Shown: positions 2,402-63,860 of the stretch, piece by piece
Position numbering within the stretch: the first letter of the stretch is position 1
Layout of the letters: each line of letters opens with the position of its first letter
Assembly (NCBI RefSeq): GCF_004010195.1
Contig: NC_057710.1
Span: 23,330,779-23,394,778 of the forward strand
Direction of reading: 5' to 3'
DNA: 64,000 nucleotides
Source of the DNA: Chiloscyllium plagiosum
Taxonomy: Eukaryota
Made by a program: the position numbers and the translations under genes
The notes under the pieces: model-generated
The model's database searches: none
Told to the model about the DNA's origin: nothing
Seen by the model: the letters and a program-made list of their open reading frames with translations, nothing else

Positions 2402-2720
2402 GGTAGGGGACAGTGAGGTCTGCAGATGCTGGAGATCAGAGTTGAGAGTGTGTTGCTGGAAAAGCACAACAGGTCAGGCAGCATCCAAGGAGCAGGAAAA
2501 TCAACGTTTTGGGTGGAAGCCCTTCATCAGGAATGAGGCTGGGAGCCTCAGGGGTGGAGAGATAAGTGGGAGGGGGGTGGGGCTGGGGAGAAGGTAGCTG
2601 AGAGTGCAATAGGTGGATGGAGGTGGGGGTAAAGGTGATAGGTCAGAGCGGAGGGTGGAGCAGATAGGTCAGAAGGAAGATTGACAGGTGGCACAGGTCA
2701 TGAGGACAGGTCATAAGTGT
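2402..2720 (-). mobile_element. Penelope-like element 3' terminus
   Basis: ctgcagatgctggagatcagag...cccttcatcagg module shared with 18220, 22300, 25580 and 47520. Confidence 0.7.
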
Positions 2721-9634: not shown

Positions 9635-10306
9635 CACTCCCCTTACCCATAGTCTTCAGCAGCACTCTTACTGCAACCACAGGCAATTGACTCGCCTTGA
9701 AATTGTTGCTGCCAATTTGTCCTTATCCTGCCCATTGTTTCTAATCAGACGATAATCCCAAACGCAAATTTCATCATCAGACCCTTCTGGTAGGATTGAG
9801 CCAAAGATTAGAAACTCCTGAAATTTACCTATTCTTATCCTTTCCCATGTCTTCAATAATGGTGTCAATATTTGCTTCTATCTAGGTGTTATCCTCAATT
9901 TTCATATTTAAGTAAAATGTAGCTGTGCTATCTCCTCTCTCAGTTTCTTCAATGATGTTGGTTGTCATCTGAAAGCTGGTGACTTATCCATTCTCAATTT
10001 TACTGAATTTTTTTTATATGATACAGGCCATTTCTGTAGCTATCTTTAACAATGTTATACTTTCCTCCAGTGCATTAACCTTCTCACTGCCCTCATCATT
10101 TGTAAAACATAATACAAAGTACTTAATCCATCCCATTACCTTAACTCTATTGTCCATGATTACATTCTCATCTCTGAGTTGTCCTACTCTGTCTTTAACC
10201 AGAATCTTGCATTGCTAATATGCCTTTGGAAGCATTCAGTATTTCGAATGCAGTAGTACTTTGTTAGCTTTTTAATTACATTCTCTTTAGCGTCTAACCT
10301 CAGTTT

Positions 10307-10513
10307 TGATTTGGAGATGCCGGTGTTGGACTGGGGTGTACAAAATCAAAAATCACACAACACCAGGTTATAGTCCAACGGTGTAATTGGAAGCACTAGC
10401 TTTTGGAATGTTGCTCCTTCATCAGGTGATATCACCTGATGAAGGAGCGATGCTCCGAAAGCTAGTGCTTCCAATTACACCTGTTGGACTATAACCTGGT
10501 GTTGTGTGATTTT
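10307..10513. mobile_element. Fold-back short element (Penelope-terminus derived) with hammerhead ribozyme core
   Basis: Arms about 10348-10430 and 10431-10513 are inverted with no spacer; TSD taacctcagttt at 10295-10306 and 10514-10525. Confidence 0.8.
10433..10467 (+). ncRNA. Minimal type I hammerhead ribozyme motif
   Basis: cac-CTGATGA-a-ggagc(gat)gctcc-GAAA-gcta-gtg: stem I cac/gtg, stem II 5 bp, palindromic AGCT stem III, CUA cleavage triplet. Confidence 0.72.
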
Positions 10514-11449
10514 TAACCTCAGTTTGTCCACGTCGAACCAGATTGCTTTATTCCTCATGGCTTTAGTTTGAACTGTAAGTTATCATAATTATCCCTGCTA
10601 AATTTACAAATAATGAAACGTGCAAAGACTTTGTGCCTAAGGATATATTTTGCTGAGAATTCAATTTCAGAAACAAAGAACAGAAATTCATTCTTCAGTG
10701 TGCCTGATCACTGTAAACACAAGCTGACTTCCTGACACTCTGCCATGCCTGTCTTCTCCACCATGCATTGGCATTGTCAAAGTGAAAGAGTTCTCCTGGA
10801 GTTGTGACCAATATTTTTCCAGTGTGTTTTTTTTTAACATAAGATGTGGCCATGTTGGCTGGCTAGTATTTATTGCCCATCCCTAGTTGCCTTTGAAAAG
10901 GTGGTGGCCTTCTTGAACCGCTGCAATCCATCTGCTGTGGGTTGAGCCACAATGCCCTGAGGGAGGGAATGCCAGGATTTTGGCCCAGCGACAGTGAAGG
11001 AACGGTGTGATATTTCCAAGTCAAGGTGATTTGGAGGGGAACTTGCAGGTGGTCTTCCAATGTACTTGCTACTGTTGCCCTCATTCTTGTAAACTCCTAT
11101 AAATATAATCCCAACCGATTCAGTCTCCTTCAGTAAAATCTAGAGAGCTGGCCAAATGACTACTATGTAACCGCTGTTGATTGTTGTTAAAAACACCTGG
11201 TTCACTCATGTTCTTTCATGAAGGAAGTTTGCTGTCCTCACCCTGTTTGACCTACACGTGACTCCAGACTCCCAGCATTGGGGTTGACTCTTAACTGCCC
11301 TCTGGGCAATTAGGGATGGGCAATAAAATGCTGGCCTGGGAGGGAACTCTCACATCACCTGAATGATATCTTTTTAAGTGCACAATTAGCTGTCAGGTCT
11401 TAACTGTCCCGAGGTAATGAAAGGCGCTACATAAATGCAAGTTCTGTTT

Positions 11450-12429: not shown

Positions 12430-13580
12430 AAAACCTGTATCAATCCCCATTTGTAGAGGCAAGGATTAATCCGGGACAATTAGCATGACTTTGTCAGGGG
12501 AGATTGTCAGACAGATTTGATTGAGTTTTGAAGGAGGTGATTGGATGGATAAATGCGAGGTATTGCATTTTGGTACAACAAATACGGTGGAACTTATACA
12601 ATTAATGGTAGGGCCTTGGGAAGTGTTGTAGAATAGAGGAACCCAGGGGTTCAGGTACATAATTCTTTAAAGTTAGCGTCACATATAGACAGAATGGTTT
12701 AAAAAGGTGTTTGGCACACTTGAAACGTTGATTTTCCTGCTCCTCGGATGCTGCCTGACCTGCTGTGCTTTTCCAGCACCACTCTGATTTAAACACCTTG
12801 CCTTCATTGCTCAGTCCTATGAATATAGGAGTTAGGAAGTCATGTTGAGGTTGTACAGGACATTGGTGAGGCCTCTTCTGGAATACTGTGTCCATTTTTG
12901 GTTGTCCAGTTATAGGAAGGATATTATTAATCTAGAGAGGGTTCAGATGAGATTTCCCAGGATATTGCTAGGTATGGGAGGTTTGAGTTATAAAGAAAGG
13001 CTGGATAATCTGAGACTTTTTTCACTAGAATGTAGAAAGTTGAGAGGTGACTTTAAAGAAGTTAGTGGGTGGCACTAAATCTCTAGATTAATAATATCCT
13101 CACAGCGCCAGAGACCCGGGTTCAATTCCCGCCTCAGGTGACTGTGTGGAGTTTGCACGTTCTCCCCGTGTCTGTGTGGGTTTCCTCCGGGTGCTCTGGT
13201 TTCCTCCCACAGTCCAAAGATGTGCAGCTCAGGTGAATTGGCCATGCTAAATTGCCCGTAGTGTTAGGTAAGGTAAATGTAGGGATATGGGTGGGTTGCA
13301 CTTCGGCAGGTCGGTGTGGACTTGTTGGGCTGAAGGGCCTGTTTCCACACTGTAGTGTAATCTAATCTAAATCATGAGGGGTATAGATAGGGTTAATAGT
13401 AGGTGTCTTTTTCCTCGGATGGGGGATTTCAAGACTGGGGGGCACATTTTTAAGGTGAGAGGACAGAGATTTTAAAAAAGACAAGGGGGCAATTTTTTTA
13501 ACACAGAGGGTGGTTTGCATGTGGAATGAACTTCCTGAGGACGCGATGGAAGTGGGAACAATTACAATGTTTAAAAGATC
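12430..13580 (+). mobile_element. CR1 LINE fragment with nested Penelope-terminus and HE1 inserts
   Basis: MLRLYRTLVRPLLEYCVHFW...LERVQ...LRGD. Confidence 0.85.
13066..13369 (+). mobile_element. HE1-type tRNA-derived SINE (5' end disrupted)
   Basis: B box ggttcaattcc, central conserved domain, taatct tail. Confidence 0.88.
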
Positions 13581-18219: not shown

Positions 18220-18441
18220 TGGAGAAAGTGAGGACTGCAGATGCTGGAGATCAGAGTCGAGAGTGTGGTGCTGGAAAAGCACAGCAGGTCAGCAGCATTG
18301 AGGAGTTGGAGGATTGATATTTCGGGCATAAGCCCTTCATCAGGAATTTTATGTTGAAGAACTTATGCCCGAAATGTCGATCCTCCTGCTTCTGGGATGC
18401 TGCCTGACCAGCTGGGCTTTTCCAGCACCACACTCTTCGAT
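18220..18441. mobile_element. Fold-back Penelope-terminus element
   Basis: Inverted arms; 14-bp TSD ttagtaaatacggt at 18206-18219 and 18442-18455. Confidence 0.8.
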
Positions 18442-20361: not shown

Positions 20362-23300
20362 GTAAGTACATTTCCAGCTGAAAGTTTCACTGCGTGAAAA
20401 TGCTGGCATTCCTGTCGTTTATGTTTGGGCGAGTTTTGAATAGGAGACTTGTTTAAAGAGCTTTGTTTAAAGAAATCCACAGTCATACTGCAGAGGGGGG
20501 GGGGGGGGGCGTTCGGCCGCTTCTATCAGTGCCTGACCTTTGAAAGAGAGACGCAATTGGTGCCACTCTCCCTTGTAACTGATTTCTTAGGAGGAATTGA
20601 TCCCATTTCCAGAGAATTGGAGACTGATTGCAGAGCAGGAGGCGGCAATTCGGCCCATCGCTGGCTGTCCACACGGGCAGCTCACTTCTTCCCAATCCTC
20701 CCACTCAGACAAGGAACCAATTCTCTTTTGGATTGAGTCAGCCTCTCGGGGGCAGAAAGTCAGAGGCCCGACCACGTATAAAATCCTAACGAATCCGCAT
20801 CCTCTAAAGGCTGGAAGAGAATAGGGAATGTTGAAACAATGCAGTCGAATCTCGCTAGGGAGGGGAGGGATAACAGGAAAATAACGCCGTGTCTGTCCGT
20901 GCAGGTGCCCAGGCGGAGACAATCCTCCAGCAGACTCCGAGAGAAATACTGGCGGCCAAAGGCGAGAATGTCGAACTCACCTGTAATCTGAAGAGGGGCA
21001 CACTCGATGAGGTCTTCTGGTACAAGCTAGAGGGAAACTCCCAGGCCCATTTTCTGAAGTCCGCCACTGTCCTGAACAGACAGGCCTCAGGAGAGGGAAT
21101 AACCGGGCGGTTCATTTTAACCAGAGATGCCTTTCGACTGTCGTTCAGTTTAACCATAAAAGACATACAACTGTCAGACAACGGCACCTACTACTGCCTG
21201 ATGCTCAGCTCCTACTTTGTGTCTTTGGGAGGTGGAAGTGTGGTCACAGTAGGTAAGAAGCTTTCCAATTTCAATACCCCCTACCGTAACAAATAATCAA
21301 AATAAGCATCGACTTTAAGAAACAAAATAAGGAATTGCTGTTTGCTGAACGACTGAGACAAGAACAGGAAGTTTTGGAGAAGCTCTATAGGTCTGGCAGC
21401 AGTTATGGAGAGAGAACACATAGTTAACGTTTCGGGGTGAGTGACCCTTCTTTAGAACTGGGCTCTCTCTCCAAGCTGCTGTCAGACCTGCTGAGTTTCT
21501 CCAGCAATTTCAGACCTCTCCAGTGTTTTATTGAAGGGAGACTGACCGTCCCTTCTGATTATGTCGGGGTTTATGTTTGACTCCCACCTAAAGTTCTGGC
21601 TGGTGTGGGTCCCGCTGGTTGGACTGGGGATTATTAGTGACATGAATCGCCACAGCTGTCAAGTCTAACAAAGTTTTTAAAAAAATCACACAACACCAGG
21701 TTATTGTCCAACAGGTTTATTTGGAAGCACTAGCTTTCGAAGCGCTGCTCCTTCATCAGGTAGCTAGTGCTTCCAAATAAACCTGTTGGACTATAACCTG
21801 GTGTTGTGTGATTTTTAACTTTGTACAGCCCAGTCCAACACCTGCTCCTTCACATCAAGCCTAACAAAGTCAGGCTTTGGTTTGTGATAAATAGTTGCTG
21901 TCGGTCATTCTGTGAGTTGACAGATGGCCCGTGGATATACCGTAGACCATTAAAACGTTGCTTGTTTCAGTTCCAGAACGAAAGATAGTAACTTCTCCGC
22001 CTCCGACTACTAAACGCCACAGAATCCATCACTTCAACTACCCCAAGGTGCGAAACAAGAAGCAAACGTGGAATCATGGTAAGATCAATGCGTTCACTGT
22101 GTCTGAGACAGACAGACTAGCGCTGTTCAGTCAATCTGACTGATAAATACAGCTAGTTACAGTCCAATATCTCAACAGTACACGCACATTGATGGAAAAC
22201 AGAAACTCAGCAGGTCTGGCAGAGAGAAAACACAGAGTTAACGTTTCGGGTCCAGTCCAAAGAAGGACCCGAAACGTCAACTCTACTTTCTCTCCAGACC
22301 TAGGCAAAAGTGGGTACTGCAGATGCTGGAAAACCAGAGTTTAGATTACAGTGTTGCTGGAAAAGCGCAGCAGGTCAGGCAGCATCCGAGGAGCAGGAAA
22401 ATCAACGTTTCGGGCAAAAGCTCTCCATTCCTGATGAAGGGCGTTTGCCCGAAACGTCGATTTTCCTTTCTCTCCAGACCTGCTGAGTTTCTCCAGCAAT
22501 TTCTGATTTCCCGCAGTTCTTTGCTTTATTTAGAGCTTGCCTTCCAATGTGCTGATTCGTTATCAGCACAACATTGACAGGGGAATCATCACAGCATTTT
22601 CCTCAAGCACTGTCTAGCTGAAGCCAACTTCATATCTTTGTTTTTTTTTAACTTCAAAAGTCCTCGATCTGAAATGTTTCCCACTGATGCTGAATGTTTC
22701 CCGCGCTTCCCCTAATTTGTAAACGTTATTTTCCTTTTTGTTATGGAGACGATCCGTTTGGGATATTTGGTAATTCAGTTTAGGCCCCAAATAGCATCTG
22801 GATGTTTTTTCGAACCAGGAAAGAAAATACCGTCAGAAACCTGCCCGCGTTATCTAGCTTTGGCGTAGAGCTGAGTAAATTCTGAAGTACTGGGAGGTGT
22901 ATGTATAAATGGGAAACACTCTCAGTTGAACACGTACTAGGGGGAAATACTATCTGTAGGAGATGGTGGGAGGGCGTCCTGTGTTTTTAACCTTTACTGG
23001 AAATCCTTTCATGGTATTTTCTACATTCCCCTTCTCGCAGTCCCTTCATTTATTTATGGCCTATTATATGGCAGCGCCATTTATGACCGTCCAGGACACA
23101 TAACAACATAAGCACCAGGAGCAGGAGTAGGCCATCCGGCCCATCGAGCCTGCACCGCCATTCAATAAGATCATGGTCGGTCTTTTACTGGACTCAACTC
23201 CACTTACCCCTCTGTTCATCATAACCCTTAATTCTTTTACTGTTCAAAAATCTTATGTCTTGGCCTTAAAGGCATTTAACGAGGTAGCCTCAATTGGGCA

Positions 23301-26300
23301 GGGAATTCCACAGATTGACAGCTCTCTGAGTGAAGAAGTTCCTCAACTCAGTCCTAAATCTGCTCCCCATTATTCTGAGGCTGTGCCCCTTGGTTCTAGT
23401 TTCACCCGCCAGTGGAAACAACCTCCCTATTCCCTTCAGAATTTGATATGTTTCTATAAGATTGTGGTCCTTCTTCTAAATGCTAATGAGTGAAGTCCCA
23501 TTTTACTGAACCTCTCCTCTTAACTCCAGAGTCAACCTAGTGACCCTCTTCTTGCACCCCCTCCAGTTCCTCCTTTCTCGAGTAAGCAGACTCTGGAATC
23601 TCCTCTCTCAGCCTCTCTACTGCCCTACAACACTCGGGCCTCAATTCTCAACGCATTTTAGGCCCCAGCCCTATTATCTCTCAATGTGGCTGGGCGCCAT
23701 TGACAACGCCTTGGCAGTTGTTGCGTGCTGCTACATAAATGCACTGTTATTTGTCCTCCTATAGTGGGGGGGGGGGAAGGTGAATGTGGAGGTTTACAAA
23801 CATGAAATAGCTTTGGTTTTGAAATGCCAGTATGAGCATTTTTATCTTGTTCCCTGCGAATGTTGGTGAATGGATTTGTGAGGAAGCTGGCCTGTCCCAA
23901 ATACCGGGGTCAGGCCGCTCCGAGTCTTTTCCATTAAAACCATTGGACGGGGTCAGACTGCAGGAAAATGTCACCCTGAAGTGTAAGGCTGCCGTGCATT
24001 TCCAATTGAGTTTGCAGCGCACAAGGAGACGCCTCCTGAGCAGGGTTTTATGTTGCTTTTCTTTTACTTAAAGCAAGGCAAAACTACTTTATTAATTCCC
24101 GTAGCCCCGCTTTCCCGTTTAACGTACAATTGCCTGTCTGAAAAGGGTGCATGAATACTGACAGTCCTCACTGGTTAACTGCAGAACTCCCTTGTGCTTG
24201 CCAATTTTACCAAAAACAAATCCTAAAGAACTGAGGATGTTGGAAATCAGAACCAAACACAGAAATTGCTGGAAAAACTCGGCAGCTCTGGCAGCATCGC
24301 TGGAGCGAAAACAGTTACCGTTTCGGGTCCGGTGGAGAAGGGGGGTAGATCCCAGCCTCGGGGGACTGTGTGGAGTTTGCACATTCTCCCCATGTCTGCA
24401 TGAGTTTCCTCCCACAGTCCAAAGATGTGCAGGTCAGGTGAATTGGCCATGCTAAATTGCTCATAGTGTCCAGGGATGTGTAGGTTAGGTGCATTAATTA
24501 GGGGATATGTAGGGTATTAGGTTAGGGGAATGGGTCTGGGTGAGATACTCTTCGGAGGGTAGGTGTGGACGTGTTGGGCTGAAGGCCCTGTTTCCACGCT
24601 GTAGGGATTCTATAATTCTATAAATGCTGCCGAGTTTTTCCAGTAATTTTTGGATTTTCGTTTGAATAGAAGAGTGTTCATTTCAGAAGACATCTTTACA
24701 AAACGGGGGCTGGCTTGGTTTTAATGGATGTGTTGGCAGAATAAATGAGGGCAATGTTGGCCCGACACGAGCTGTGGGTGGTGATGGGGAGAAGGGGGTG
24801 ATTAATATTGAAGGAGCTGGGATTCTTAACTTCTCTCCACTCGCTTGGAATAAAATCATGGTGTTGTCAATTTCTGAATTCTTACACGTGCCGTCAGTTG
24901 GGCCTTTAGTCTGAACTACTGCCCCGAGGAATTAAATGAGAGACAAGTTATTTATTTATTGCCGGGATAAATCTAAACCGTCATCTGCCGCAGATTGGAG
25001 AGATACCCAGCAAATTAGACAGTGGATAATCCCACCGAATTCTATGGTTATTTCAGATTTCGGCCAATCTTGCGATGTAATCCATAAATCAGTGGTTGTA
25101 ATTAATAGAAATCTTCCTGATACACACGCAGTGACTACACAGCAGCATCACTCCGATTAGGAACAGTTGCCTTGGTCGAGTGAAAGTCCCAGTGCTGAAT
25201 TTGTACAAGTATATGGTCATTTGTTTCGTGTTTTGTTTTCTGGGACCTTGATGGACCTTCCCAGCAATGCATCAGTGACCTTCCTGTCATTTATATAAGT
25301 GGGTTGGATGTGAATATAGGAAGAATGGTTGGTAAGTTTGCAGATGACACCAAAATTGAAGGTGTTGTGGACAGCGAAGAAGGTCATCTTAGTACCATGG
25401 ACCTTGATCAGATGGGCCAATGGGCCCCTGAGTGGCAGATGGAGTTTGATTCAGATAAATGTGAAGTGTTGCATTTTGGAAAGGCAAATCAGGGCAGGAC
25501 TTATACACTTAATGGGTAATATTGCCAGAGAAAGAGACCTTGGAGTACAGATTCATAATTCCTTGGATGTGGAGTCACAGTCGAAATGTGTGGCTCTGGA
25601 AAAGCACAACAGGTCAGGCAGCATGCTAGGAGCAGGAGAATCCACGTTTAGGGCATAAAGCCTTCATCAGGAATGTAGAGGGGGCTGAGAGATAAATAGG
25701 GGGTGGGGGTGGGGCTGGAGCTGGAGCTGGAGGGAGGTGCAAAATTGGAGGGTTGGATTTGGGATGAGGTTGGGGGAGAGGAGACTTGGAAACTGATGAA
25801 ATAAATGTTGATGCTGTGTGGTTGTAGGGTCCCAAGATGGAAGATGAAGCGTTCTTCCTCCAGGTGTCAGGTGGCTGGGATTTGATGGTGGAGGAGGCCC
25901 AGGACTTGCATGTCCTTGGTGGAGTTGGAAGGGGAGTTTAGATTCTCTACAGTGTGGAAACAGGCCCTTTGGCCCAACAAGTCCACACTGACCCTCCGAA
26001 GAGTAACCCACCCAGACCCGTTTCCCTCTGACTAATGCACCTAACACTACGGGCAATTTAGCATGGCCAATTCACCTGACCTGCACATCTTTGGACTGTG
26101 GGAGGAAACCGGAGCACCCAGAGGAAACCCACGCAGACACGGGGAGAATATGCAAGCTCCACACAGACAGTCACCCGAGGCTGGAATCGAACCTGGAACC
26201 CTGGCACTGTGAGGCAGCAGTGCTAACCACTGAGCCACCGTGCCGCCCAAAGTTGAACTGGTTAGACACAGGGCAGTGGGGTTGTTTGGTGCATATGTCC

Positions 26301-29049
26301 CAGAGATGTTCCCTGAAATGCTTCACGAGTTGGCGTTCTGTCTCCGTTGTAGAGGAGACCACATCAAGAGCAACAGACGCAGTAGATGAGGTAGATGGAT
26401 GTGCAGGAAAATCTCTGCTGGATGTGAAAATATCCTTTGGGGCCTTGGACAGAGTGGAGAGGGGGAGGCATGGAGTCACAGGTAGACAGGATAGTGAAGA
26501 AGGCTTTTGGTATGCCTGCCTTTATTGGTCAGTGCATTGAGTATCAGAGTTATGTCCTGTTGTGGCTGTACAGGACATTGGTTGCACCACTTTTGGAATA
26601 CTGCATTTGGTTCTAGTACAGGGAAGATGTTGTGAAACTTGAAAGTGTTCAGAAAAGATTTACAAGGATGTTGCCAAGGTTGAGGGAGAGGCTGAATAGG
26701 CTGGGGCTATTTTCCCTGAAGCCTCGGAGGCTGAGAGGCGACCTTATACAAGTTTATAAAATCATGAAGAGCATGGATAGGGTAAATTGACAAGGTTTTT
26801 TCCCTTACCAGTGAGTCCAAAACTAGAGGGTATTGTTTAAGGTGAGAGGGGAAAGATTTTAAAGGAATCTATGGGGCAGTATTTTCAAGCAGAGGCTGGT
26901 GCATGTATAGAATGAGTTGCCAGAGGAAGTGGAGGAGGCTGGTACAATTACAACATTTAAAAGGCATTTGGATGGGTGTATGAATAGAAAGGGTTTAGAG
27001 GAGTATGGGCCAAATGCTTTCAAATGGGACTCGATTAATTTAGGATATCTGGTTGGCATGGACAAATTGGACAGAAGGGTCTATTTCTGTGCTGTGCAGC
27101 TCTATGACTCTATGACCACACTTTTAACACACTTCTTTGAATAAAATATCCATCATAGGATGTATGTATCACTAGATAGGGCAGCATCTATTGCCTATCT
27201 GCAATTGTCCAGAGGGCAGTTAAGAGTCAACCACATTGCTGTAGGTTTAGAGTCACATATTGGCCAGACCAGATAACAATAGCAGATTTCCTTCCATAAA
27301 GGAATTTAGTGAACCAGTTTTTTAAACGTACATAAGAACAATTAACAGTGGTTACATTGTCGATAGCAGGCTGGCTTTTCATTCCAGATTTTATTGAAGT
27401 CAAATTTCACCATCTTAACAGGGTCGGAATCAGACTCATGTCCCCAGAACATTAACCTGAATGACCAGCCCAGTGACATGAATATTTCTTCCTTCATTGC
27501 CTGTAAAACAAACTTAGAGAGTGTCTGCAGCAATAAGTTCCTGACAGTCAAGGGGACCACATGTGTCAACAAATCTGTGAACAGATAAACAGGTAGAATC
27601 CTTTAGACCAAGAGGCAGGTGCCTGATCTGAGCAGAGGGGAAGGGTTGGGAGGGTTCAAGTTTTGATTTAACTAATTGAATTAGAGGCTCGAGCTCTGTC
27701 TAGCAAGAGAGTCAGAAGTTACAGGACACCCAGTTATAATCCAACAGATTTATTTGAAATCACAAGCTTTTGGAGCTCTGCTCCTTCATCAGGAGATTCA
27801 ACAGTGGAAATTTATGTGGAGTCTGAAAAACGACAATAATATTAATCACGAGTGAGGGGCATTATATCTGCAATTAGCCTTAGTCTTTCTCATGCTCTCA
27901 TTTTCCTCTATTCCTAAAGGTTTATAAAATCTAGCATATTTTGTATTTTTCTAAGTAACATGAACCTAAATGGAGTCATAGAGATGTACAGCAACTTTTC
28001 CATGAGGTCGAGTAGCGGTCATCAGGAACAGACACATTTTCAGGCTCTCCTCGTCTTGGTCTGAAAACAACAAATTCTGGAGATCACAGCGGGTCTTACA
28101 GCATCCATTGAGATAGAGCAAGCTAACATTTCAAGTTTAGATGACTCATCATCGGAGTTCATCTAGACTGAAACATTAGCTTGCTTTCTCTCCACGGGTG
28201 CTTCTGATCCACTGTGATCTCCAGCTTTCGTTGTTTTCAATACAGATTCCAACGTCTGCATTAATTTGCTCTCGCTTTGGTTTGACCCTGGATGGTTTCA
28301 AGGTCTGGAAGATGACAGAGCCATTACGGAAAGGAGTGCAAATAGGAACTGACATCCAGGCTGACAGCTCACTGACAATAATCTGAATCGAAAGTCAATG
28401 ACTTTCTCACCGGGAGTTCAAAGATTCCCAAACCATGGGATTGCCTTGTGGTGTTGCGTGGACAATGTGTCAGTTTTGCTCAAGAGTGCTTTGTCTTGTG
28501 CTGTACCGAGTAAGGGATTTGCTGCTGTTTGCTTTGCAGGGTACGTGTGTAGCTGGAGTATCTGGGGCTCTCTGACTGCCTGCAACCTCCTGCTCCTGTC
28601 CTCCATTGCCTTTGTTGTCATCAAACACAAGATCCAGAGTAAGCGCCAAAAGCTGTCTCGTGTGTCTGCGTGTGTGTAATTGTGCGTGTGTGTCTGTGAA
28701 TGTGTGTGTGACTGTCTGAGTGTGTGTCTGAGTGTGATTGTCTGTGAGTGTGTATGTCTGTGAATGTGTGTGATTGAGTGTGTCTGCGAATGTGTGATTG
28801 TGTGTGTCTGAGTGTGATTGTCTGAGTGTGTCTGTAGTGCGTGTCTGAGTGTGTGTCTGTGAGTATGTGTGTAAGACTGCCTGTGAGTGTGTGTGTGATT
28901 GTCTCTGTGAGTGTATGTATTAACCTCGTCATTGCTACATTGCACTCACCTGTGGAGTATTTAGTTATTTATTTAATTGGGCGGCCTCTCTTTCTCTTCC
29001 ATTTCTAGAATCCCGGAGGCGATGTCCCCACCAGTTTCGGAAAAGGTAA
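20316..29049 (+). CDS. cd8b: T-cell coreceptor CD8 chain, most like CD8 beta; spliced CDS join(20316-20361,20905-21252,21971-22078,28540-28638,29009-29049), 213 aa
   Basis: Seen: four GT-AG introns, all phase 1, give an open 642-nt frame: MHLLGYIWMLSCWMKSAQAETILQQTPREILAAKGENVELTC...VFWYK...DNGTYYCLMLSSYFVSLGGGSVVTVVPERKIVTSPPPTTKRHRIHHFNYPKVRNKKQTWNHGYVCSWSIWGSLTACNLLLLSSIAFVVIKHKIQKSRRRCPHQFRKR*. Knowledge: leader/V/stalk/TM/cytoplasmic exon layout, a Cys-x3-4-Trp TM start and a cytoplasmic CxH are CD8 hallmarks in fish. LQQTP N-terminus, RDA in the D strand, short stalk, GxxCS before the TM and a short tail favour beta over alpha. Alpha is not excluded. Confidence 0.8.
20905..21252 (+). 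CDS. CD8 exon 2 (V-set Ig domain with joined J-like G strand)
   Basis: Acceptor gtgcag|; B-strand Cys (ELTC), C-strand Trp (FWYK), DxGxYYC, GGGSVVTV; donor G|GTAAGA at 21253. Confidence 0.93.
21675..21854. mobile_element. Fold-back element of the 10307 family in CD8 intron 2
   Basis: Same aaaatcacacaacaccagg arms; TSD tcaag(t/c)ctaacaaagt at 21659-21674 and 21855-21870; hammerhead core on the minus strand at about 21728-21762. Confidence 0.8.
21971..22078 (+). CDS. CD8 exon 3 (stalk/hinge)
   Basis: Acceptor ttgtttcag|, donor G|GTAAGA at 22079, 108 nt, phase 1-1; Pro/Thr-rich TSPPPTTK followed by a basic stretch. Confidence 0.85.
22190..22530. mobile_element. Nested Penelope-terminus elements in CD8 intron 3
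   Basis: Inner element flanked by TSD tttctctccagacct, sitting inside an outer palindromic element (agagttaacgtttcgggtcc...ggacccgaaacgtcaactct). Confidence 0.75.
22429..22460 (+). ncRNA. Minimal hammerhead ribozyme motif (sense to CD8 pre-mRNA)
   Basis: tc-CTGATGA-a-gggc(gttt)gccc-GAAA-cgtc-ga; stem I only about 2 bp. Confidence 0.55.
23095..23570 (-). mobile_element. CR1 LINE 3' fragment
   Basis: Closely similar to 40740-41400. Confidence 0.8.
24349..24622 (+). mobile_element. HE1-type SINE (5' truncated)
   Basis: Central domain tgtgtggagtttgcacattctcccc and 3' tail. Confidence 0.85.
25580..26468 (-). mobile_element. Penelope-like element 3' part (GIY-YIG remnant)
   Basis: ETERQLVKHFREH remnant, hammerhead-type terminus, TSD tggagtcacag on both sides. 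Confidence 0.75.
25938..26248 (-). mobile_element. HE1-type SINE, full length
   Basis: tRNA A/B boxes on the minus strand, central domain, tail. Confidence 0.9.
28540..28638 (+). CDS. CD8 exon 4 (transmembrane)
   Basis: Acceptor tttgcag|, donor A|GTAAGC, 99 nt, phase 1-1; GYVCSWSIWGSLTACNLLLLSSIAFVVIKHKIQ. Confidence 0.88.
28658..28920 (+). repeat. Degenerate (TG)n microsatellite with recurring longer units
   Basis: tgtgtgattgtctgagtgtgtgtctg-like units filling most of CD8 intron 4. Confidence 0.95.
29009..29049 (+). CDS. CD8 exon 5 (cytoplasmic tail, CxH motif)
   Basis: Strong polypyrimidine acceptor ctctctttctcttccatttctag|; KSRRRCPHQFRKR then TAA at 29047, which overlaps a possible donor AG|GTAAAG at 29046. 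Confidence 0.87.
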
Positions 29050-35869: not shown

Positions 35870-38800
35870 GCAATATGGTTCTATGTCAGGATTACAAGAA
35901 ATGGAATAAAACTAAAAGTAAAGGCTTACAAAATTGTGAAAAACAGCACAGATCTTGCCAAATGGGAAAGAGCCACAAAGCAACTTATAAGAACTACTAA
36001 AGGGACAATGTACTGATTCTTATGTCTGCAGGAAATGTCTTTGATTGAAAATCCTATCAGATCGCATGGATTGGTTGGAGCCGCAGTTAGTGGCAACAAT
36101 GAAACTACAGGGGCAAGAGGATGTGATGGATGGCAGTTATAGGAAGAGAGAAAAGCTGTAGATACAGTAAGGTAGATGGGTTAACTCCAGGAGAGGGAAG
36201 CAGGAGGCAGGTTGAGATGTGGCTATCCCCATTTCAAACAAGAATGCTGTTTTCGAAAATGTAGGGTTGATGGATTCTTAGGGGAATGTAGCATGAACAG
36301 CCAAGATTCTGGTACCAAGAATGACTCTAATGTAGTGAGGAGTATGTCAGGTTCCGAGCAATCCATTGTGATAGGGGGCTACCTAGTCAGAGGCACAGAC
36401 AGATGCTTCTGCGGCTGGCAGCAAAAAATCAGAATGGTGTGCTGCTTCCCTGAGGCCAGGATCAAGGATATCTCAGAGGGTGCAGGATGTTCTCAAAGAG
36501 GAGAGGGACCAGCAGGAAGTCATTGTGCACATTGGAACTAATGACATAGGAAGGGAAAAAGATGAGATGTCTTAAAACATAAAGCATAAAAGTGGATAAA
36601 TCCCTAGGATCTGATCAAGTGTACCCTAGAACTCTGTGGGAAGCTAGGGAAGTGATTGCTGGGCCCCTTGCTGAGATATTTATACCATCAATAGTCACAG
36701 GTGAGGTACTTGAAGATTAGAGGTAGGCTAACGTGGTGCCACTGTTTAAGAAGAGTGGTAAGGACAAGCCAGGGAACTATAGACCAGTGAGTCTGACATT
36801 GGTGGTGAGCAAGTTGTTGGAGAGAATCCTGAGGGACAGGATTTACATGTATTTGAAAAGGCAAGGGCTGATTGGGGGTAGACAACATGGCTTTGTGCAT
36901 AGGAAATCATGTCTCACAAACTAGATTGAGTTTTTTTGAAGAAATAACAAAGAGGATTGATGAGGCAGAGCAGTGGATGTGATTCTATGGACTTCAATAA
37001 AACATTTTACTAGGTTCCTCATAGTAGATTGGTTAGCAAGGTTCTAGTTCATGGAGTACAGGCGGAAATAGCCATTTGAATATAGAACTGGCTTGAAGGT
37101 AGAAGACAGAGTGATGAAAAAGGGTTGCCTTTCAGACTGGAGGCCTGTGACCAATGGTGTACCACATGAACGGTGCTGGGTCCAGTGCTTTTTGTCACTT
37201 GTATAAATGGTTCAGATGTGAGCATAGCAGGTATAGTTAGTAAGTTTGCAGATGATGCCAAATTTGGAGGTATAGTGGACAGTGAAGAAGGTTACCTCAG
37301 AGTACTCTAGGATCTTGATCAAATGGGCCAGTGGGCTGAGGAGTGGCAGATGGAGTTTAATTTAGATAAATGTGAAGTGCTACATTTTGAAAAGGCAAAT
37401 CAGCAGGACTTGTACACTTAAAGGTAAGGTCCGGGGAGTGTTGCTGAACAAAGAGACCTTCTGGTTCATAGTCCTTTGAAAGTGGCGTCGCAGGTAGACA
37501 GGATAGTGACGAAGGTGTTTGGTATGCTTTCCTTTATTGGTCAGAGCATTATGTATATAAGGTAAAAACAATAACTGCAGATGCTGGAAACCAGATTCTG
37601 GATCAGTGGTGCTGGAAGAGCACAGTAATTCAGGCAGCATCCAATGAGCAGCGAAATCGACGTTTCAGGCAAATGCCCTTCATCAGGAATAAAGCCTTTA
37701 TTCCTGATGAAGGGCTTTTGCCCGGAACGTCGATTTCGCTGCTCGTTGGATGCTGCCCCATTGTGTATATAAGTTGAGAGGTCATGTTGCAGCTGTATAG
37801 GACATTGGTTACGCCACTTTTGGAATATTGCATGCAATTCTGGTCTCCCTCGTCTCAAAGATGTTGTGAAACTTGAAAGGGTTCAGAAAGAATTTACAAG
37901 GATGTTGCCAGGGTTGGAGGATTTGAGGTACAGGGAGAGGCTGTATAATATGGGGCTGTTTTCCCTGGAACATTGGAGGCTGAGGGGTAATCTATTAGAG
38001 ATTTATAAAATCTTGAGGGGAATGGATAGGGTAAATAAACAATGTATTTTCCCTGGGGTGGGGGAGTCCAAAACTAGAGGGTTTAGAGTAAAATATAAAA
38101 GGGACCTATGGGCAATTTTTTTCATGCGGAGGGTGGTGTGTGTATAGCACGAGTTGCTAGAGGAAGTGGTGGATTACGACATTTAAAATGCATCTGGATG
38201 GGTATACAAATAGGAAGGGTTTAGAGCGATTTGGGCCAAATGCTGGCAAATGGGACTATATTAGTTTAGGATATCTGGTCAGCATGGACAAGTTGGACTG
38301 TTTCTGTGCGGTACATCTCTATGACTGTATGACTCCATGAAAGGAAACTTGCAAGAAACATCAAATTCAACAGGAAGATATTTTATAGTTATATAAAATG
38401 GAAAGCAGGTGGTCAGAAGCAATGTTGGGCTTGAACCTGGGTGTTTTCAATGGCTATTGGGAAATGGCAAACATGTTGAGAAATTACTTTGCCTCAGTAT
38501 TTACAGTAGAGAAACTGTAAATTAACAATGGATCGGGGACAGAGACTTAATAAAATTTACACATATGAACATTGATAATGCAAACGTTAAAATAAATAAA
38601 AAGTGATCTAAGGGCCCAGGACTTAAAGATTTCCATCTAATGGTGTTAAAGAGGTAGGGGAGCATGTTGTAGTTGTCCTAACTATCATCATTCAGAGTTC
38701 CTTAGGTTTTGTCCCTCTGGTATGGAAAATTGCACATGTCACTGTACTTTTTAAGAAGAATGTAAGCGTGGAATTACAGGCCAGTTAGCCTAACACCTGG

Positions 38801-45654: not shown

Positions 45655-46713
45655 CCTCTGTTTAAATGGGAAATTGCTTATATACCTGGAATCCTGATGA
45701 GCTTATGTCCAAAACCGTGACTCTCTTGCTTCTCAGATGCTGCCTGACTGGCTGTGCCTTTTCCAGCATCGCACTTCATCGACTCTGACTCTCCACCCTC
45801 TGCAGTCCTCACTATCTCCTAAATTCCTTGTTTTCCTAGTTTGACCCCCATTTCTGGATTCTCCCATAAGATGAACATCCTTTCAATATCCAGCCAGTTA
45901 AATCACCTATGATTCTTCTAAACTGTAGAGAATAAAGGCCCACCATGTCTAGCCTTTCTGCACAAGGCAACCCGTTTATTCCTGATACTAGATCTAATAA
46001 ACTTTCTCTGAACTGCTTCCAATGCTTTAACACCCTTCCACAAGTATGGTGATTAGTACTGTACACAGTACTCCATAGGTGGTCTCACAAATGCCCTGTA
46101 TAACTGATGCAGCTACAGCAAGCAGTTGAAGAAAGAACAAAGAAAATTTACAGCCCAGGAACAGACCCTTCAGCCCTCCAAGCCTGAGCCGATCCAAATC
46201 TACTGTCTAAACCTGTCACCCAATTCCTAAGCATCTGCATCCCTCTGCTCCACACCTACTCATGCATCTGTACAGACGCATCTTAAATGAATCTACTATT
46301 CCTGCCTCTACCACCTCTGCTGGCAACGCGTTCCAAATGCCCACTACCTGCTGTGTAAAGTACTTGCCACGTGTATCCCCCTTAAACATTTCACCCCTCA
46401 CCTCGAAACCATGACCTCTCATTATTTAACAGCTTATCTCTGTCTACCCTGTCTATACCCTTCATGATTTTGTAGACTTCAATCAGATCCCCCCTCAATC
46501 TCCTTTTTTCTAATGAAAACAAACTTAACCTACTCAACCTCTGTCATAGCTAGCACCTTCCATACCAGGCAACATCCTCATAAACCTTCTCTGCACCCTC
46601 TCCAAAGCATTCACTTCCTTTTGGTAATGTGTACAGGACTGTACACAGAATTCTAAATGCGGCCGAACCAACATCATGTACAATTTTAACATGACCTGCC
46701 AGCTCTTATGCTC

Positions 46714-47617
46714 ACCCTGCCCCCTGTAAAAACGCCATCCCATTCTCCCAATTCCTTCGACTCCGCCGCATCTGCTCCCAGGAGGACCAGTTCCAAAAAC
46801 GTACAACCCAGATGGCCTCCTTCTTCAAGGACCGCAATTTCCCCCTGACGTGGTCGACGATGCCCTCCATCGCATCTCTTCCACTTCCCGCTCCTCCGCC
46901 CTTGAACCCCGCCCCTCCAACCGCCACCAGGACAAAACCCCACTGGTCCTCACCTACCACCCCACCAATCCCCATGTACAGCGCACCATCCGCCGTCATT
47001 TCCGCNNNNNNNNNNNNNNNNNNNNNNNNNNNNNNNNNNNNNNNNNNNNNNNNNNNNNNNNNNNNNNNNNNNNNNNNNNNNNNNNNNNNNNNNNNNNNNN
47101 NNNNNNNNNNNNNNNNNNNNNNNNNNNNNNNNNNNNNNNNNNNNNNNNNNNNNNNNNNNNNNNNNNNNNNNNNNNNNNNNNNNNNNNNNNNNNNNNNNNN
47201 NNNNNNNNNNNNNNNNNNNNNNNNNNNNNNNNNNNNNNNNNNNNNNNNNNNNNNNNNNNNNNNNNNNNNNNNNNNNNNNNNNNNNNNNNNNNNNNNNNNN
47301 NNNNNNNNNNNNNNNNNNNNNNNNNNNNNNNNNNNNNNNNNNNNNNNNNNNNNNNNNNNNNNNNNNNNNNNNNNNNNNNNNNNNNNNNNNNNNNNNNNNN
47401 NNNNNNNNNNNNNNNNNNNNNNNNNNNNNNNNNNNNNNNNNNNNNNNNNNNNNNNNNNGGAGGCCACATCGGGTGCAGAGGATGCAATAGATGATGTGTG
47501 TGGAGGTGTGGACAAACTTTCCTCATTCCTGAAGAAGGGCTTATGCCCGAAACGTCGATTCTCCTGTTCCCTGGATGCTGCCTGACCTGCTGCGCTTTTC
47601 CAGCAACACATTTTCAG
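46714..47617 (+). mobile_element. Penelope-like element (RT C-terminus, gap, inverted piece, hammerhead terminus)
   Basis: HPAPCKNAIPFSQFLRLRRICS and PLVLTYHP motifs; core CTGAAGA-a-gggc(ttat)gccc-GAAA-cgtc at 47529-47556; TSD cttatgctca. Confidence 0.85.
47006..47458. other. Assembly gap (N run)
   Basis: Run of n. Confidence 1.
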
Positions 47618-61939: not shown

Positions 61940-63860
61940 AAAGCAGGATAAATCCAACAAGCCAATAACCACCCCATCAGTCTGCTCTCAGTCATCAATA
62001 AAGTGATGGATGGTGTCACCAACCGTGCTACCAAGCAGCACCTGCTCAGCAATAACCTATTCAGTTACACCCAGGTTGGGTTCCGCTAGGGCCACTCAGT
62101 TCCTGACTTCATTACAGCCCTTGGTTCAAACATGTACAAGAGAGCTGAATTCCAGAGGGGAGAGTGACATCTCTTGGCATCAAGCTTTCATTCAATTGAG
62201 TGTGGCATCAAGGAGCCCTGGCATAACTGGAATCCGAGGGCAATCTCTCCTCTGGTTGTCATGATTTGGAGATGCTGGCGTTGGACTGGGATGTACAAAG
62301 TTAAAAATCACACAACACCAGGTTATAGTCCAACAGGTTTAATTGGAAGCACTAATTTTCAGAGCGCTGCTTCTTCATCAGGTGGTTGCTCTCCTCTGGT
62401 TGGAGTCATACCAGGCACATAGGAGGATGGTTGTGGTTGTTGGAGGTCAGTCATCTCAGCTCTCGGACATCACTGCAGGAGTTCCTCAGAGTAGTGCCCT
62501 AGGCACAACCATCTTCAGCTGCTTCATCAATGACCTTCCTGCCATCATAATGTCAGAAGTGGGGATGTTTGCCAATGATTCCATAATATTCAGCACCAAT
62601 TATGACTTCTCAAAAGCAGTCTATGATCAAATTCAATAAGATTTGGACAATATCTATGCTTGGACTGACAAGTGACAAGTAACATTTGCATAACAAATAC
62701 CAGACAATGACCAGCTCCAATAAGAGACAATCTAACCACTACTTCTTTACACTTAATGTGTTTCATAGAACACAGAACATATGGATCTTTGGTGAATTTC
62801 TACAATGCGTCTTGCAGATGGTACATACTGCTAATACTGATTGTCAGTGGTGGAGTGAGTGGATGCTTGAGATTTGGTGCCATTCAACCGGGCCCGTCGG
62901 CCCTCGATGTTGTGCTGACCTTTTATTCTATTCTAAGATCAAACTAACATACATATCTTGCATTTTACTATCATTCATTTGCCTATTCAAGAGTTACTTC
63001 ACTGAATTTCCCGCTATCAACAATCTTGGGGTTACTGTCGAAGAGAAACTATCTGAATTCACTGCTTAAACACAAAGGCTACAAAAGCAGGTCACATACT
63101 AGGCATACCGCAGTGAGTAACTCACCTCCTGATTCCCCTAAGCCTATCTGCCATCTACAAGCCACAAGTTAGAAGTGCAAAGTGATACTGCCCACTTGCC
63201 TGGATGGGTGCAGCTCCAACAACACTCAAGTAGCTTGAAACCATCGAGGAGAAAGCAGCCCGGTTGAATCGCACCAAATCTCAAGCATCCACTCACTCCA
63301 CCACTGACAATCAGTATTAGCAGTGTGTACCATCTGCAAGACGCATTGTAGAAATTCACCATAGATCCATATGCAGCACCTTTCAAACCCACGATCACTT
63401 CCATCTAGATGGACAAGGGCAGCAGATACCTGGGAACATCACTACTTAAAAGTTCCCCCCAAGCCACTCACCATCCTGACTTGGAAATATATCACCATTC
63501 TTTCACTATGGCTGACTCAAAATTCTGGAATTCCCTCCATATGGACATTCTGGGTGTACCTATAGCATGTAGACTGCAGCAGTTCATAAAGGCAACACAG
63601 CACCACCTTCTCAAGGGCAATGAAGGACTTGCTGGTGTTGGTGTTCTGATGTATTTGCTGCCTTTGTCTTTCTAGAGGAAAGCGGTTGTTGGTTTGGAAG
63701 GTGCTGTCAGAGGCTTGAATTTCAATAAGGCATCTGTTAGGTATTACACTGTTGCTGCTAAGCATTGATGATGGAGGGAATGGATGCTTGTGAATATAGT
63801 GCCAATAAAATGGCTGTTTGTCCTGGATGGTATCAAGCTTCTTGAATAATGTTGGAGGTA
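61940..63860 (+). mobile_element. CR1/L2-group LINE RT fragment with nested inserts and an inverted tail piece
   Basis: ITAGVPQSSALG..FSCFINDLP...MFAND motif; 10307-family insert at about 62260-62390 with TSD tctcctctggttg. Confidence 0.75.

What the first reader, a model, noticed from the sequence alone, without database searches (positions are those of the whole stretch)
10307..10513. Short TSD-flanked fold-back retroelements built from hammerhead-ribozyme termini
Seen: a spacer-less palindrome of about 165 bp centred on 10430/10431, with a 12-bp TSD. One arm has an intact hammerhead core (10433-10467); the opposite-strand arm has a decayed one. Relatives lie at 21675-21854, 62260-62390 and about 27710-27792. 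Knowledge: Penelope-like elements carry minimal hammerheads, and palindromic helix III allows dimeric cleavage. Inference: a non-autonomous, retrozyme-like family mobilised by Penelope RT/GIY-YIG. A MITE-like look is misleading, since 12-16 bp TSDs of variable sequence fit target-primed reverse transcription.
Basis: partly seen in the sequence, partly recalled or inferred. Interest (0 to 1): 0.8.

Follow-up and report, generated by a model that had tools for sequence, protein, structure and literature searches.

The report
Miniature Penelope-type fold-back retroelement copies
This is a real, very abundant short mobile element carrying a minimal hammerhead-ribozyme motif, inserted here as a head-to-head double copy in the way already described for Penelope-like retrotransposons, so it is a clear example of a known kind and not a new one.

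Summary
10307-10513 is an insertion flanked by a perfect 12-bp duplication. It consists of a spacer-less 166-bp palindrome plus a 41-nt one-sided extension. The right arm carries a complete minimal type-I hammerhead (10433-10467). The left arm's copy is broken mainly at CpG sites. Three relatives lie in the window: one more fold-back and two single units. TSDs are 12, 14 and 16 bp in the three young copies.

A strict hammerhead descriptor hits 3 times, against 0.005 expected. The motif meets the published marks of Penelope-like-element (PLE) minimal hammerheads. The layout also matches published PLE grammar: a head-to-head inverted 5'-truncated copy, a 30-40-bp tail at one end only, and TSDs. 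A second, unrelated-sequence family in the window shows the same layout. MITE is rejected.

"Retrozyme-like" is not supported: 0 of 4 loci are tandem and there is no RNA evidence. In the fold-back the hammerhead is locked in an 83-bp hairpin, so this copy is a relic. Contigs of three related species hold the family in tens of thousands of pieces.

Other first readers of this scan noted the same architecture on many other pieces of this genome. Verdict: new member of a known kind, moderate-to-low interest.

The parts
10295..10306 (.). left copy of the 12-bp target-site duplication
   Evidence: D1, 100% identical to 10514-10525
10307..10347 (-). 41-nt 'tail', the 3' extension of the unit, present only on the left arm
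   Evidence: 1317/1308/1467 contigs of three species lose similarity just before 10307.
10348..10430 (-). left arm. The unit is read on the minus strand. Its hammerhead remnant at 10394-10428 has G12->A and a damaged stem II.
   Evidence: (found only when G12 may be A)
10431..10513 (+). right arm, tail-less, with a complete minimal hammerhead at 10433-10467. The predicted cut is after A10464.
   Evidence: Family similarity runs to 10516/10517, which gives 3-4 nt of microhomology (TAAC) with the target.
10514..10525 (.). right copy of the 12-bp target-site duplication
21675..21761 (-). copy 2, tail-less arm with an intact hammerhead (21728-21762, minus strand)
21762..21854 (+). copy 2, tailed arm. 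It starts at A15.1 and so lacks the catalytic core. The whole copy is flanked by a 16-nt TSD with 1 mismatch (21659-74 / 21855-70).
62259..62388 (-). copy 3, a single full unit with tail. Perfect 14-bp TSD (62245-58 / 62389-402). Helix III reads AAUU instead of AGCU.
27677..27798 (-). copy 4, an old single unit (about 76% identity) with G12->A. No TSD is recognisable.

Best explanation
10307-10513 is one insertion of a short (about 130-150 nt), non-coding, very high-copy retroelement family, called F1 here.

The unit, read 5' to 3' as RNA, has four parts: a short leader, a minimal type-I hammerhead, a conserved body of about 50 nt, and an optional tail of about 41 nt.

It was inserted by target-primed reverse transcription of the Penelope-like-element (PLE) type:
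- Staggered nicks 12-16 bp apart gave the TSD.
- cDNA synthesis began at one of two 3' sites, about 49-53 nt or about 90 nt after the hammerhead cut site, and ran to the RNA's 5' end.
- A second, inverted copy was joined head-to-head at that 5' end during the same insertion.

The tailed arm marks the protein-directed start. The short arm meets the target through a few bases of microhomology.

What is shown: the anatomy, the TSDs, the hammerhead motif, the abundance, and the recurrence of the layout in a second family.

What is inferred: that a PLE reverse transcriptase / GIY-YIG endonuclease acts in trans, that the RNA runs in the hammerhead-sense direction, and how the second arm is made. Copy 2 needs two separate priming events. 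For the symmetric copies, self-priming of the cDNA is equally possible.

The template RNAs had not been cut at their own hammerhead, because the arms keep the catalytic core. In the fold-back copy itself the hammerhead is a relic, because a read-through transcript folds into an 83-bp hairpin that buries it.
For: Anatomy and TSDs:
-.
- The single-arm copy 62259-62388 has its own perfect 14-bp TSD.

Hammerhead:
- The strict descriptor gives 3 hits against 0.005 expected.
- The core is identical in three families that share nothing else.

PLE grammar:
- PMC3846280 (passages) describes an inverted pLTR, a 31-bp optional tail, TSDs, and palindromes at head-to-head junctions.
- In this window, 6 of 14 loci of families F1 and F3 are fold-backs, and 6 of 6 fold-backs have one long and one short arm.

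Distances:
- The 3' ends lie about 49-53 and about 90 nt after the cut in F1, and 53, 85 and 97 nt after it in F3.
- For the anole PLE, PMC11167929 (main text read) puts the cut at +26 and the RT start at +111-118. That is 85-92 nt by my subtraction. The same paper reports two start sites a tail apart and both DNA strands cut and extended in vitro.

A PLE is present in the window:
- ORF 57088-57513 gives a weak GIY-YIG match (Pfam E 0.0015, below the cut-off).
- 17 of 30 Atlas hits are eukaryotic GIY-YIG clusters.
- A CxxC...HxH pattern can be read.
- Its own minimal hammerhead follows at 57497-57536.

Abundance and boundaries:
- 69,853 / 59,010 / 62,356 contigs of three species were laid at 85% or more.
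- Similarity is lost exactly at 10307 and at 10516/7.
Against: - No autonomous PLE with this family's tail was found. The PLE fragment at 57.5 kb is unrelated beyond the core.
- Only 5 hammerhead-bearing arms are available. None shows a compensatory double change in stem I or II.
- Stem I is only 3 bp.
- Rfam's hammerhead models give nothing. They also miss the hammerhead that follows the GIY-YIG ORF.
- No RNA evidence: 0 of 8.3 million reads of the one RNA run were laid, which the tool calls no test.
- The TSDs (12-16 bp) are longer than the 8-10 bp reported for rotifer PLEs.
- Other copies continue 5' of the hammerhead with shared sequence (288/262/302 contigs), so the true 5' end of the unit is not fixed by this window.
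Confidence: 0.78

Rival explanations
1. F1 is not a dedicated non-autonomous family. The copies are simply extreme 5'-truncated tails of an autonomous PLE whose ORF ends or begins at this hammerhead.
For: - PLE insertions are heavily 5'-truncated (PMC8557442 passages).
- 288/262/302 contigs continue 5' of 10433 with a shared sequence.
- In the PLE fragment at 57.5 kb the hammerhead directly overlaps the end of the ORF.
- F3 arms are truncated at varied points.
Against: - 4 of 6 F1 arms end within 6 nt of each other just 5' of stem I.
- The loose-end consensus before 10433 is specific for only about 16 nt and then becomes AT-rich, with agreement of only 0.45.
- No F1 copy in the window joins an ORF.
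Confidence: 0.15
2. It is a DNA-transposon MITE or foldback element. The palindrome arms are terminal inverted repeats that a transposase cuts and pastes.
For: Long inverted arms and a flanking duplication.
Against: - Copies 62259-62388 and 27677-27798 are single arms with no inverted repeat.
- The two outer ends of the fold-backs are unequal (41-nt one-sided tail).
- TSD lengths are 12, 14 and 16 bp.
- The centres of the fold-backs differ between copies (0 nt versus 26 nt of unpaired core).
Confidence: 0.02
3. A palindromic master copy is transcribed and retrotransposed as a whole, so the fold-back is inherited and not made at insertion.
For: Contigs elsewhere in three genomes cross the same centre. 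Summed depth at 10429 is 23,557 / 26,378 / 44,482, against 6-50 in unique flanks. A 2-nt shorter centre is seen in 10/3/4 contigs.
Against: - That depth is only about 0.5-2% of the depth on the arms.
- The two F1 fold-backs have different centres and different short-arm ends.
- The four F3 fold-backs have four different centres.
- Single units with their own TSD exist.
- A transcript of the palindrome would be a near-perfect hairpin (-158.6 kcal/mol), which is a poor template.
Confidence: 0.05

Closest known systems
Penelope-like element insertions with an inverted pLTR and a one-sided 'tail' (Arkhipova et al. 2013, PMC3846280; Craig et al. 2021, PMC8557442)
   Same: - Head-to-head inverted 5'-truncated copy.
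- A 30-40-bp extension at only one end.
- TSD around the whole structure.
- Palindrome at the inverted junction.
- Hammerhead in the repeated terminal part.
   Different: - There is no ORF between the arms, and the whole insert is 180-207 bp.
- TSDs are 12-16 bp rather than 8-10 bp.
- Copy number is very high, and the family is present in three related species.
Minimal hammerheads of metazoan PLEs (Cervera and De la Pena 2014, PMC4209133)
   Same: - CUGAUGA / GAA core.
- Bulged nucleotide after A9.
- G10.1-C11.1 pair.
- No helix III hairpin, but a 4-nt palindrome (AGCU).
- Short helix I.
- 'Dual motifs close to each other on opposite strands' are mentioned there.
   Different: - Helix II has 5 bp (7-8 bp in the schistosome families).
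- Helix I has 3 bp.
- Activity is untested here.
Animal non-LTR retrozymes (Cervera and de la Pena 2020, PMC7229834; Li et al. 2026 preprint, 10.64898/2026.07.22.740005)
   Same: Short non-coding hammerhead-bearing elements thought to be mobilised by PLEs. They co-occur with PLEs.
   Different: Retrozymes are head-to-tail tandem arrays with canonical type-I hammerheads and are expressed as circRNAs. Here there are 0 of 4 tandem loci, the hammerhead is minimal, and there are no RNA data.
In vitro behaviour of the anole PLE 'PAc' (Frangieh et al. 2024, PMC11167929)
   Same: - Two internal RT start sites a tail apart.
- The distal start is 85-92 nt after the hammerhead cut.
- Both DNA strands are cut and extended.
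- Uncleaved RNA is the template.
   Different: That is a biochemical system with an autonomous element. Here there are only genomic scars of a short element, and the cognate protein is unknown.
L1 twin priming (recalled, not read here)
   Same: The second nicked strand primes on the RNA by microhomology and gives an inverted 5' part.
   Different: Twin priming inverts a different part of the RNA without duplicating it. Here both arms copy the same segment.

Membership tests
PLE minimal hammerhead (PMC4209133) | Core C3-U-G-A-N-G-A9, G12-A-A14, A15.1/U16.1, and H17 that is not G | tested here: met
   10436-42, 10457-59, 10460/10463 and A10464. Also met in copy 2's left arm.
PLE minimal hammerhead (PMC4209133) | [quoted passage not shown] | tested here: met
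   A10443. Present in 5 of 5 core-bearing F1 arms, and also in F3 and in the PLE-linked motif.
PLE minimal hammerhead (PMC4209133) | G10.1-C11.1 pair | tested here: met
   G10444-C10456. Copy 3 has G-U at this pair.
PLE minimal hammerhead (PMC4209133) | Palindromic 15.2-16.2 (dimer helix III) | tested here: met
   AGCU in 5 of 6 arms and AAUU in copy 3. A double change kept the palindrome there.
PLE minimal hammerhead (PMC4209133) | Family-wide covariation in helices I and II | tested here: inconclusive
   Only 5 arms are available. They show G-C to G-U changes and mismatches but no double compensatory change. Across the three families the stems differ completely and still pair.
PLE minimal hammerhead (PMC4209133) | Self-cleavage (as a dimer, or protein-assisted) | not testable with these tools
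   Needs transcription assays. The RNA run gave no reads.
Rfam hammerhead families (clan CL00010) | Match to a curated covariance model | tested here: not met
   No hit at gathering score. The best hit is HH10 at 14.1 bits, E 4.3. There is no hit for copy 2 and none for the hammerhead next to the GIY-YIG ORF, so the blank says little.
Penelope-like element insertion | TSD, plus an inverted 5'-truncated copy head-to-head, plus a 30-40-bp tail at one end only | tested here: met
   2 of 4 F1 loci are fold-backs, and the tail is on one arm in 2 of 2. The same holds in 4 of 4 F3 fold-backs.
Penelope-like element insertion | RT and GIY-YIG ORF within the element | tested here: not met
   F1 copies are 122-207 bp and hold no ORF, so if F1 is PLE-type it is non-autonomous. 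A separate PLE EN fragment lies at 57088-57516.
Penelope-like element insertion | 3' region shared with an autonomous partner | not testable with these tools
   Only this 64-kb window is readable. The one PLE tail in it is unrelated.
Non-LTR retrozyme | Head-to-tail tandem repeats | tested here: not met
   0 of 4 F1 loci.
Non-LTR retrozyme | Canonical type-I hammerhead with loop-loop contacts | tested here: not met
   Open 3-bp helix I, and no loop 1.
Non-LTR retrozyme | Abundant linear and circular RNA | not testable with these tools
   X22: 0 reads laid, which the tool calls no test.
MITE / DNA transposon | Terminal inverted repeats in every copy and a TSD of constant length | tested here: not met
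   There are two single-arm copies. TSDs are 12, 14 and 16 bp.
tRNA-derived SINE | tRNA-like head | tested here: not met
   ARAGORN finds 0 genes in the window.

The most novel reading that the evidence does not exclude
The palindromic helix III of the hammerhead pairs two template RNAs head-to-head. A dimeric PLE RNP then delivers this RNA dimer to both nicks, so the fold-backs are the normal product of two-sided target-primed reverse transcription: one protein-directed, tailed start and one microhomology start. On this reading the hammerhead's main job in animals would be template dimerisation rather than cleavage, and the thousands of shark fold-backs would be a natural record from which the unsolved PLE integration pathway could be read.
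Probability: 0.1. Interest if true: 0.7.

Novelty: new member of a known kind. Interest (0 to 1): 0.35.

Why it matters
It gives a clean, small example of the still poorly understood PLE insertion pathway. The fold-back, the one-sided tail, the microhomology at the short arm and the long TSD are all readable within 200 bp, and the same layout recurs in two unrelated families in one window.

The spacing between the hammerhead cut site and the two 3' ends matches the start sites measured in vitro for a lizard PLE. A genome-wide census in these fishes could therefore test that model in vivo.

Practically, such fold-backs look like MITEs and like miRNA precursors (sub-threshold Rfam miRNA hits), so they are a likely source of annotation errors.

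Tried and rejected
Rfam:
- The scan at gathering score gave 0 matches.
- E-value scans of three small stretches gave no hammerhead model match. They gave only hairpin-shaped miRNA families below their cut-offs, which I take as shape matches.

More copies:
- A metagenome scan for a conserved 27-mer returned 0.
- No other collection on hand holds vertebrate DNA, so within-family covariation could not be tested.

RNA evidence:
- The single read-laying run included one RNA run, and nothing was laid.

Thermodynamic folding:
- The hammerhead fold is only partly in the minimum-energy structure. Stem II is present in the right arm of copy 1.
- This is not decisive either way for a minimal, dimer-type motif.

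Body and tail structure:
- A long-range helix brackets the tail-less end in F3 (4 of 6 copies folded) and in 1 of 3 F1 copies.
- z-scores are only -0.5 to -2.7, so this is kept as a lead only.

PLE fragment at 57.5 kb:
- No TSD was found for it.
- It shows no similarity to F1 or F3 beyond the core.

Orthologous presence:
- Contigs of species B and C run from unique flank 14-22 nt into the element, and 20 nt on the right side in B.
- This is under the tool's 31-letter rule for bridging, so 'older than the split' is probable but not shown.
- No empty-site joint was among the 15 joints shown of 724.

AT-rich targets:
- The loose-end consensus is AT-rich, but the window is 57% A+T.
- A plurality consensus of random flanks would look the same, so I draw nothing from it.

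Papers:
- Lunse et al. 2017 and Pyatkov et al. 2004 are not held and are cited only from reference lists or recall.
- Supplements were not opened. Supplementary alignments of PMC4209133 and tables of the 2026 preprint (which sampled one chondrichthyan) might already contain this family.
- 'Not found in print for sharks' rests only on the searches.

Full report
WHAT IS THERE

The stretch 10307-10513 is bounded by a perfect 12-nt direct repeat (10295-10306 and 10514-10525). Inside it lie two inverted arms with no spacer: 10380-10430/10431-10481 (51 nt, 90%) and 10348-10379/10483-10514 (32 nt, 100%). The left arm continues for 41 more nucleotides (10307-10347) that have no partner on the right.

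A blastn of the element against the window finds three more loci and nothing else:
- 21675-21854 is a second fold-back. Its TSD is 16 nt with one mismatch. Its arms are 55 nt, 98% complementary, with 26 nt between them.
- 62259-62388 is a single unit with a perfect 14-nt TSD.
- 27677-27798 is an old single unit of about 76% identity.

Aligned in one orientation, the six arms define a unit: a few leader bases, a hammerhead, a well-conserved body of about 50 nt, and an optional 41-nt tail. The arms of copy 1 differ at 6 of 83 positions. The 5 substitutions all fall in the stem II/loop/G12 segment that holds the arm's CpGs. The arms of copy 2 differ at 1 of 55 positions.

THE HAMMERHEAD

On the plus strand the right arm reads:
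- stem I: CAC/GUG (10433-35 / 10465-67)
- core CUGAUGA (10436-42)
- a bulged A (10443)
- stem II: GGAGC-GAU-GCUCC (10444-56)
- GAA (10457-59)
- the 4-nt palindrome AGCU (10460-63)
- A10464 as the cleavage-site residue

A descriptor I wrote required the core, an optional bulge, stem II of 4 bp or more, GAA, A15.1, a palindromic insert, U16.1, H17, and stem I of 3 bp or more. It finds 3 sites in the window: this one, copy 2's left arm, and a third at 57500. It finds none in the reversed sequence. The mean over 200 dinucleotide shuffles is 0.005, and 1 of 200 shuffles had a hit.

Allowing G12 to be A adds the left arm of copy 1. The change CCGAAA to CCAAAA is a CpG transition and is also seen in copy 4.

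Cervera and De la Pena (PMC4209133; results and discussion read) list four marks of PLE minimal hammerheads that their search did not impose. [quoted passage not shown] The fourth is family-wide covariation, and five arms cannot test it. The arms show only G-C to G-U changes and mismatches in stem II. One double change, AGCU to AAUU in copy 3, keeps the palindrome.

Rfam's hammerhead models see none of these motifs. They also miss the motif that directly follows a GIY-YIG ORF, so the blank carries little weight.

A SECOND FAMILY AND A PLE FRAGMENT IN THE SAME WINDOW

With stem I relaxed to 2 bp the descriptor finds a further family, F3, at 22431(+), 47529(+) and 37686(-). Its features are a bulged A, GGGC/GCCC, ACGU, and H17 = C. 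F3 has 10 loci in the window.

Four of them are head-to-head fold-backs with long TSDs:
- 18220-18441: TSD 14 nt, perfect.
- 22316-22463: part of a nested direct/inverted cluster.
- 37562-37758: TSD 15 nt with 1 mismatch; arms 62 nt, 94%, 1 nt between.
- 55541-55664: TSD 15 nt, perfect; arms 46 nt, 98%, 3 nt between; both arms are truncated so that no hammerhead remains.

The third strict hit, at 57497-57536, lies at the end of ORF 57088-57516. That ORF gives a weak Pfam GIY-YIG match (E 0.0015, below the cut-off). 17 of its 30 Atlas hits are eukaryotic GIY-YIG clusters. It shows a VIY...CxxC...YVG...HxH pattern. The CCHH motif is called universal to PLE endonucleases in the abstract of PMC8557442. 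This is a 5'-truncated PLE.

F1, F3 and this PLE tail share nothing beyond the hammerhead core. Local alignment scores fall within the shuffle range, and the invariant columns are the core letters only.

WHY THIS IS THE PLE INSERTION SIGNATURE

Craig et al. (PMC8557442, passages) describe PLE insertions as follows. They are highly 5'-truncated. [quoted passage not shown] Arkhipova et al. (PMC3846280, passages) describe inverted pLTRs, a 31-bp optional tail on one of them, TSDs of 8-10 bp, palindromes at the mostly head-to-head inverted junctions, and pLTRs that suffice in cis for mobilisation in trans.

In this window 6 of 14 F1 and F3 loci are fold-backs. In 6 of 6 fold-backs one arm is long and the other short.

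The 3' ends are discrete:
- In F1 they lie about 49-53 nt and about 90 nt after the predicted cut.
- In F3 they lie at query positions 90-91 (4 loci), 121-122 (4 loci) and 134 (3 loci). That is 53, 85 and 97 nt after the cut.

Frangieh et al. (PMC11167929, main text read) report the following for the anole PLE:
- The hammerhead cut is at +26.
- Reverse transcription starts at +111-118, which is 85-92 nt by my subtraction.
- A second start site lies a tail-length away.
- Both DNA strands are cut and extended.
- Uncleaved RNA is the template.
- Mutating the hammerhead has no effect on insertion.

The numbers and the two classes of 3' end fit. The F1 arms also keep the catalytic core, so their templates had not been cut at their own hammerhead.

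HOW THE SECOND ARM AROSE

The TSD encloses the whole fold-back, so both arms were made in one insertion event.

In copy 2 the left arm alone holds 26 nt of hammerhead core and the right arm alone holds the tail. Neither arm can therefore be a copy of the other, and two priming events are needed.

Short arms meet the target through microhomology:
- TAAC in copy 1. Family similarity runs to 10516/7, inside the TSD.
- 7 nt in copy 2.
- ATTC at 55537-40.

The symmetric fold-backs have 0-9 nt between arms. One of them has both arms truncated at the same internal point. They would fit equally with the cDNA priming on itself, the idea raised in PMC3846280. With six cases I cannot choose between the two mechanisms, and both may occur.

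A palindromic master copy is unlikely. The centres differ among copies of one family, and single units carry their own TSDs. Still, contigs elsewhere do cross the same centre as copy 1.

ABUNDANCE AND AGE

Contigs of runs from three coded organisms were laid on 9800-11000 at 85% likeness or more:
- 69,853 (A), 59,010 (B) and 62,356 (C) contigs were laid. These counts include a second repeat at 10825-11000.
- Summed depth inside 10292-10537 is 0.3-5 million (A), against about 6 in the flanks. The tool warns that this is no copy number.
- Most pieces are 90-95% like copy 1. For A the counts are 4717 / 15535 / 32620 / 16981 for 99+ / 95-99 / 90-95 / under 90.
- Similarity is lost just before 10307 (1317/1308/1467 contigs), just after 10517 (1776/1706/1880) and just after 10516 (445/458/471).
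- It is also lost before 10433 (288/262/302). There the loose parts share about 16 specific letters and then become AT-rich, with agreement 0.45. Many copies therefore have a somewhat longer leader than copy 1.

Flank contigs of B and C run 14-22 nt into the element. This suggests the insertion is shared, but it falls short of the tool's 31-letter rule. The RNA run gave no reads, which the tool calls no test.

WHAT THIS COPY CAN DO

A transcript across 10295-10525 folds into one 83-bp hairpin (-158.6 kcal/mol, z = -22, 0 of 200 shuffles as stable). The hammerhead strand is fully paired with its inverted partner. The two motifs also lie on opposite strands and could not form the RNA dimer. This copy is a scar, not a working ribozyme.

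REJECTED READINGS

- MITE: rejected because of the single-arm copies, the unequal ends and the varying TSD length.
- tRNA-derived SINE: rejected because ARAGORN finds nothing.
- Retrozyme: rejected because there is no tandem arrangement and the hammerhead is not canonical (features from passages of PMC7229834).

NOVELTY

The searches found no paper describing these shark families. The 2026 preprint (abstract and results read) sampled one chondrichthyan and argues that animal retrozymes derive from PLE pLTRs. Every structural feature seen here is already described for PLEs.

Other first readers of this scan noted the same architecture on many other pieces of this genome. Those are unchecked notes, and they agree with what I measured here. 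I file this finding as a new member of a known kind.

Noticed in passing
window 2420-2534, 12721-12783, 18220-18441, 22316-22463, 25590-25674, 37562-37758, 41083-41178, 45736-45806, 47525-47609, 55541-55664: A second hammerhead-bearing short family (F3), unrelated in sequence to the finding's family. It has 10 loci. 4 are head-to-head fold-backs, and 3 of those have confirmed 14-15-bp TSDs. 41083-41178 has a 13-bp TSD and an internal 19-nt direct duplication.
   Followed up: partly
window 57088-57536: A 5'-truncated Penelope-like element. The ORF has a GIY-YIG/CCHH-type endonuclease end. Its stop codon (57514-16) lies in the loop of stem II of a minimal hammerhead (57497-57536; 7-bp stem II, ACGU, H17 = C). 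No TSD was found.
   Followed up: partly
window 22230-22500: A nested cluster of F3 pieces: a 20-nt mini fold-back (22234-53 / 22265-84), a 34-nt direct repeat (22268-301 / 22448-81) like a partial tandem, and an inverted pair. This is the 'complex tandem/inverted' PLE pattern.
   Followed up: no
window 10825-11330: Another very high-copy repeat (summed contig depth 1e4-3e5 in three species). In other genomic places it abuts the ends of the finding's family directly (joints 10517->10856-10868 and 10307<->10868). Partial copies lie at 8653, 27178, 43615, 58322 and 63477.
   Followed up: no
window 21618-21628: An 11-nt perfect match to the F1 tail's inner part sits 45 nt upstream of copy 2, inside a roughly 25-nt stretch that resembles the tail. 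It may be a remnant of an older insertion or a preferred target.
   Followed up: no
window 10357-10505 and 21697-21799: The fold-backs draw sub-threshold Rfam hits to many miRNA precursor families (for example mir-302 at 41.5 bits against a cut-off of 55, and mir-8517 at 39.8 against 70). Such copies could be mis-annotated as miRNA genes.
   Followed up: no
window 37562-37660, 22302-22400, 2406-2500, 21762-21855: In F3 (4 of 6 copies folded) and in one F1 copy, the minimum-energy fold has a 7-8-bp long-range helix that brackets the place of the tail-less 3' end, with the tail starting in its 3' strand. z-scores are only -0.5 to -2.7.
   Followed up: partly
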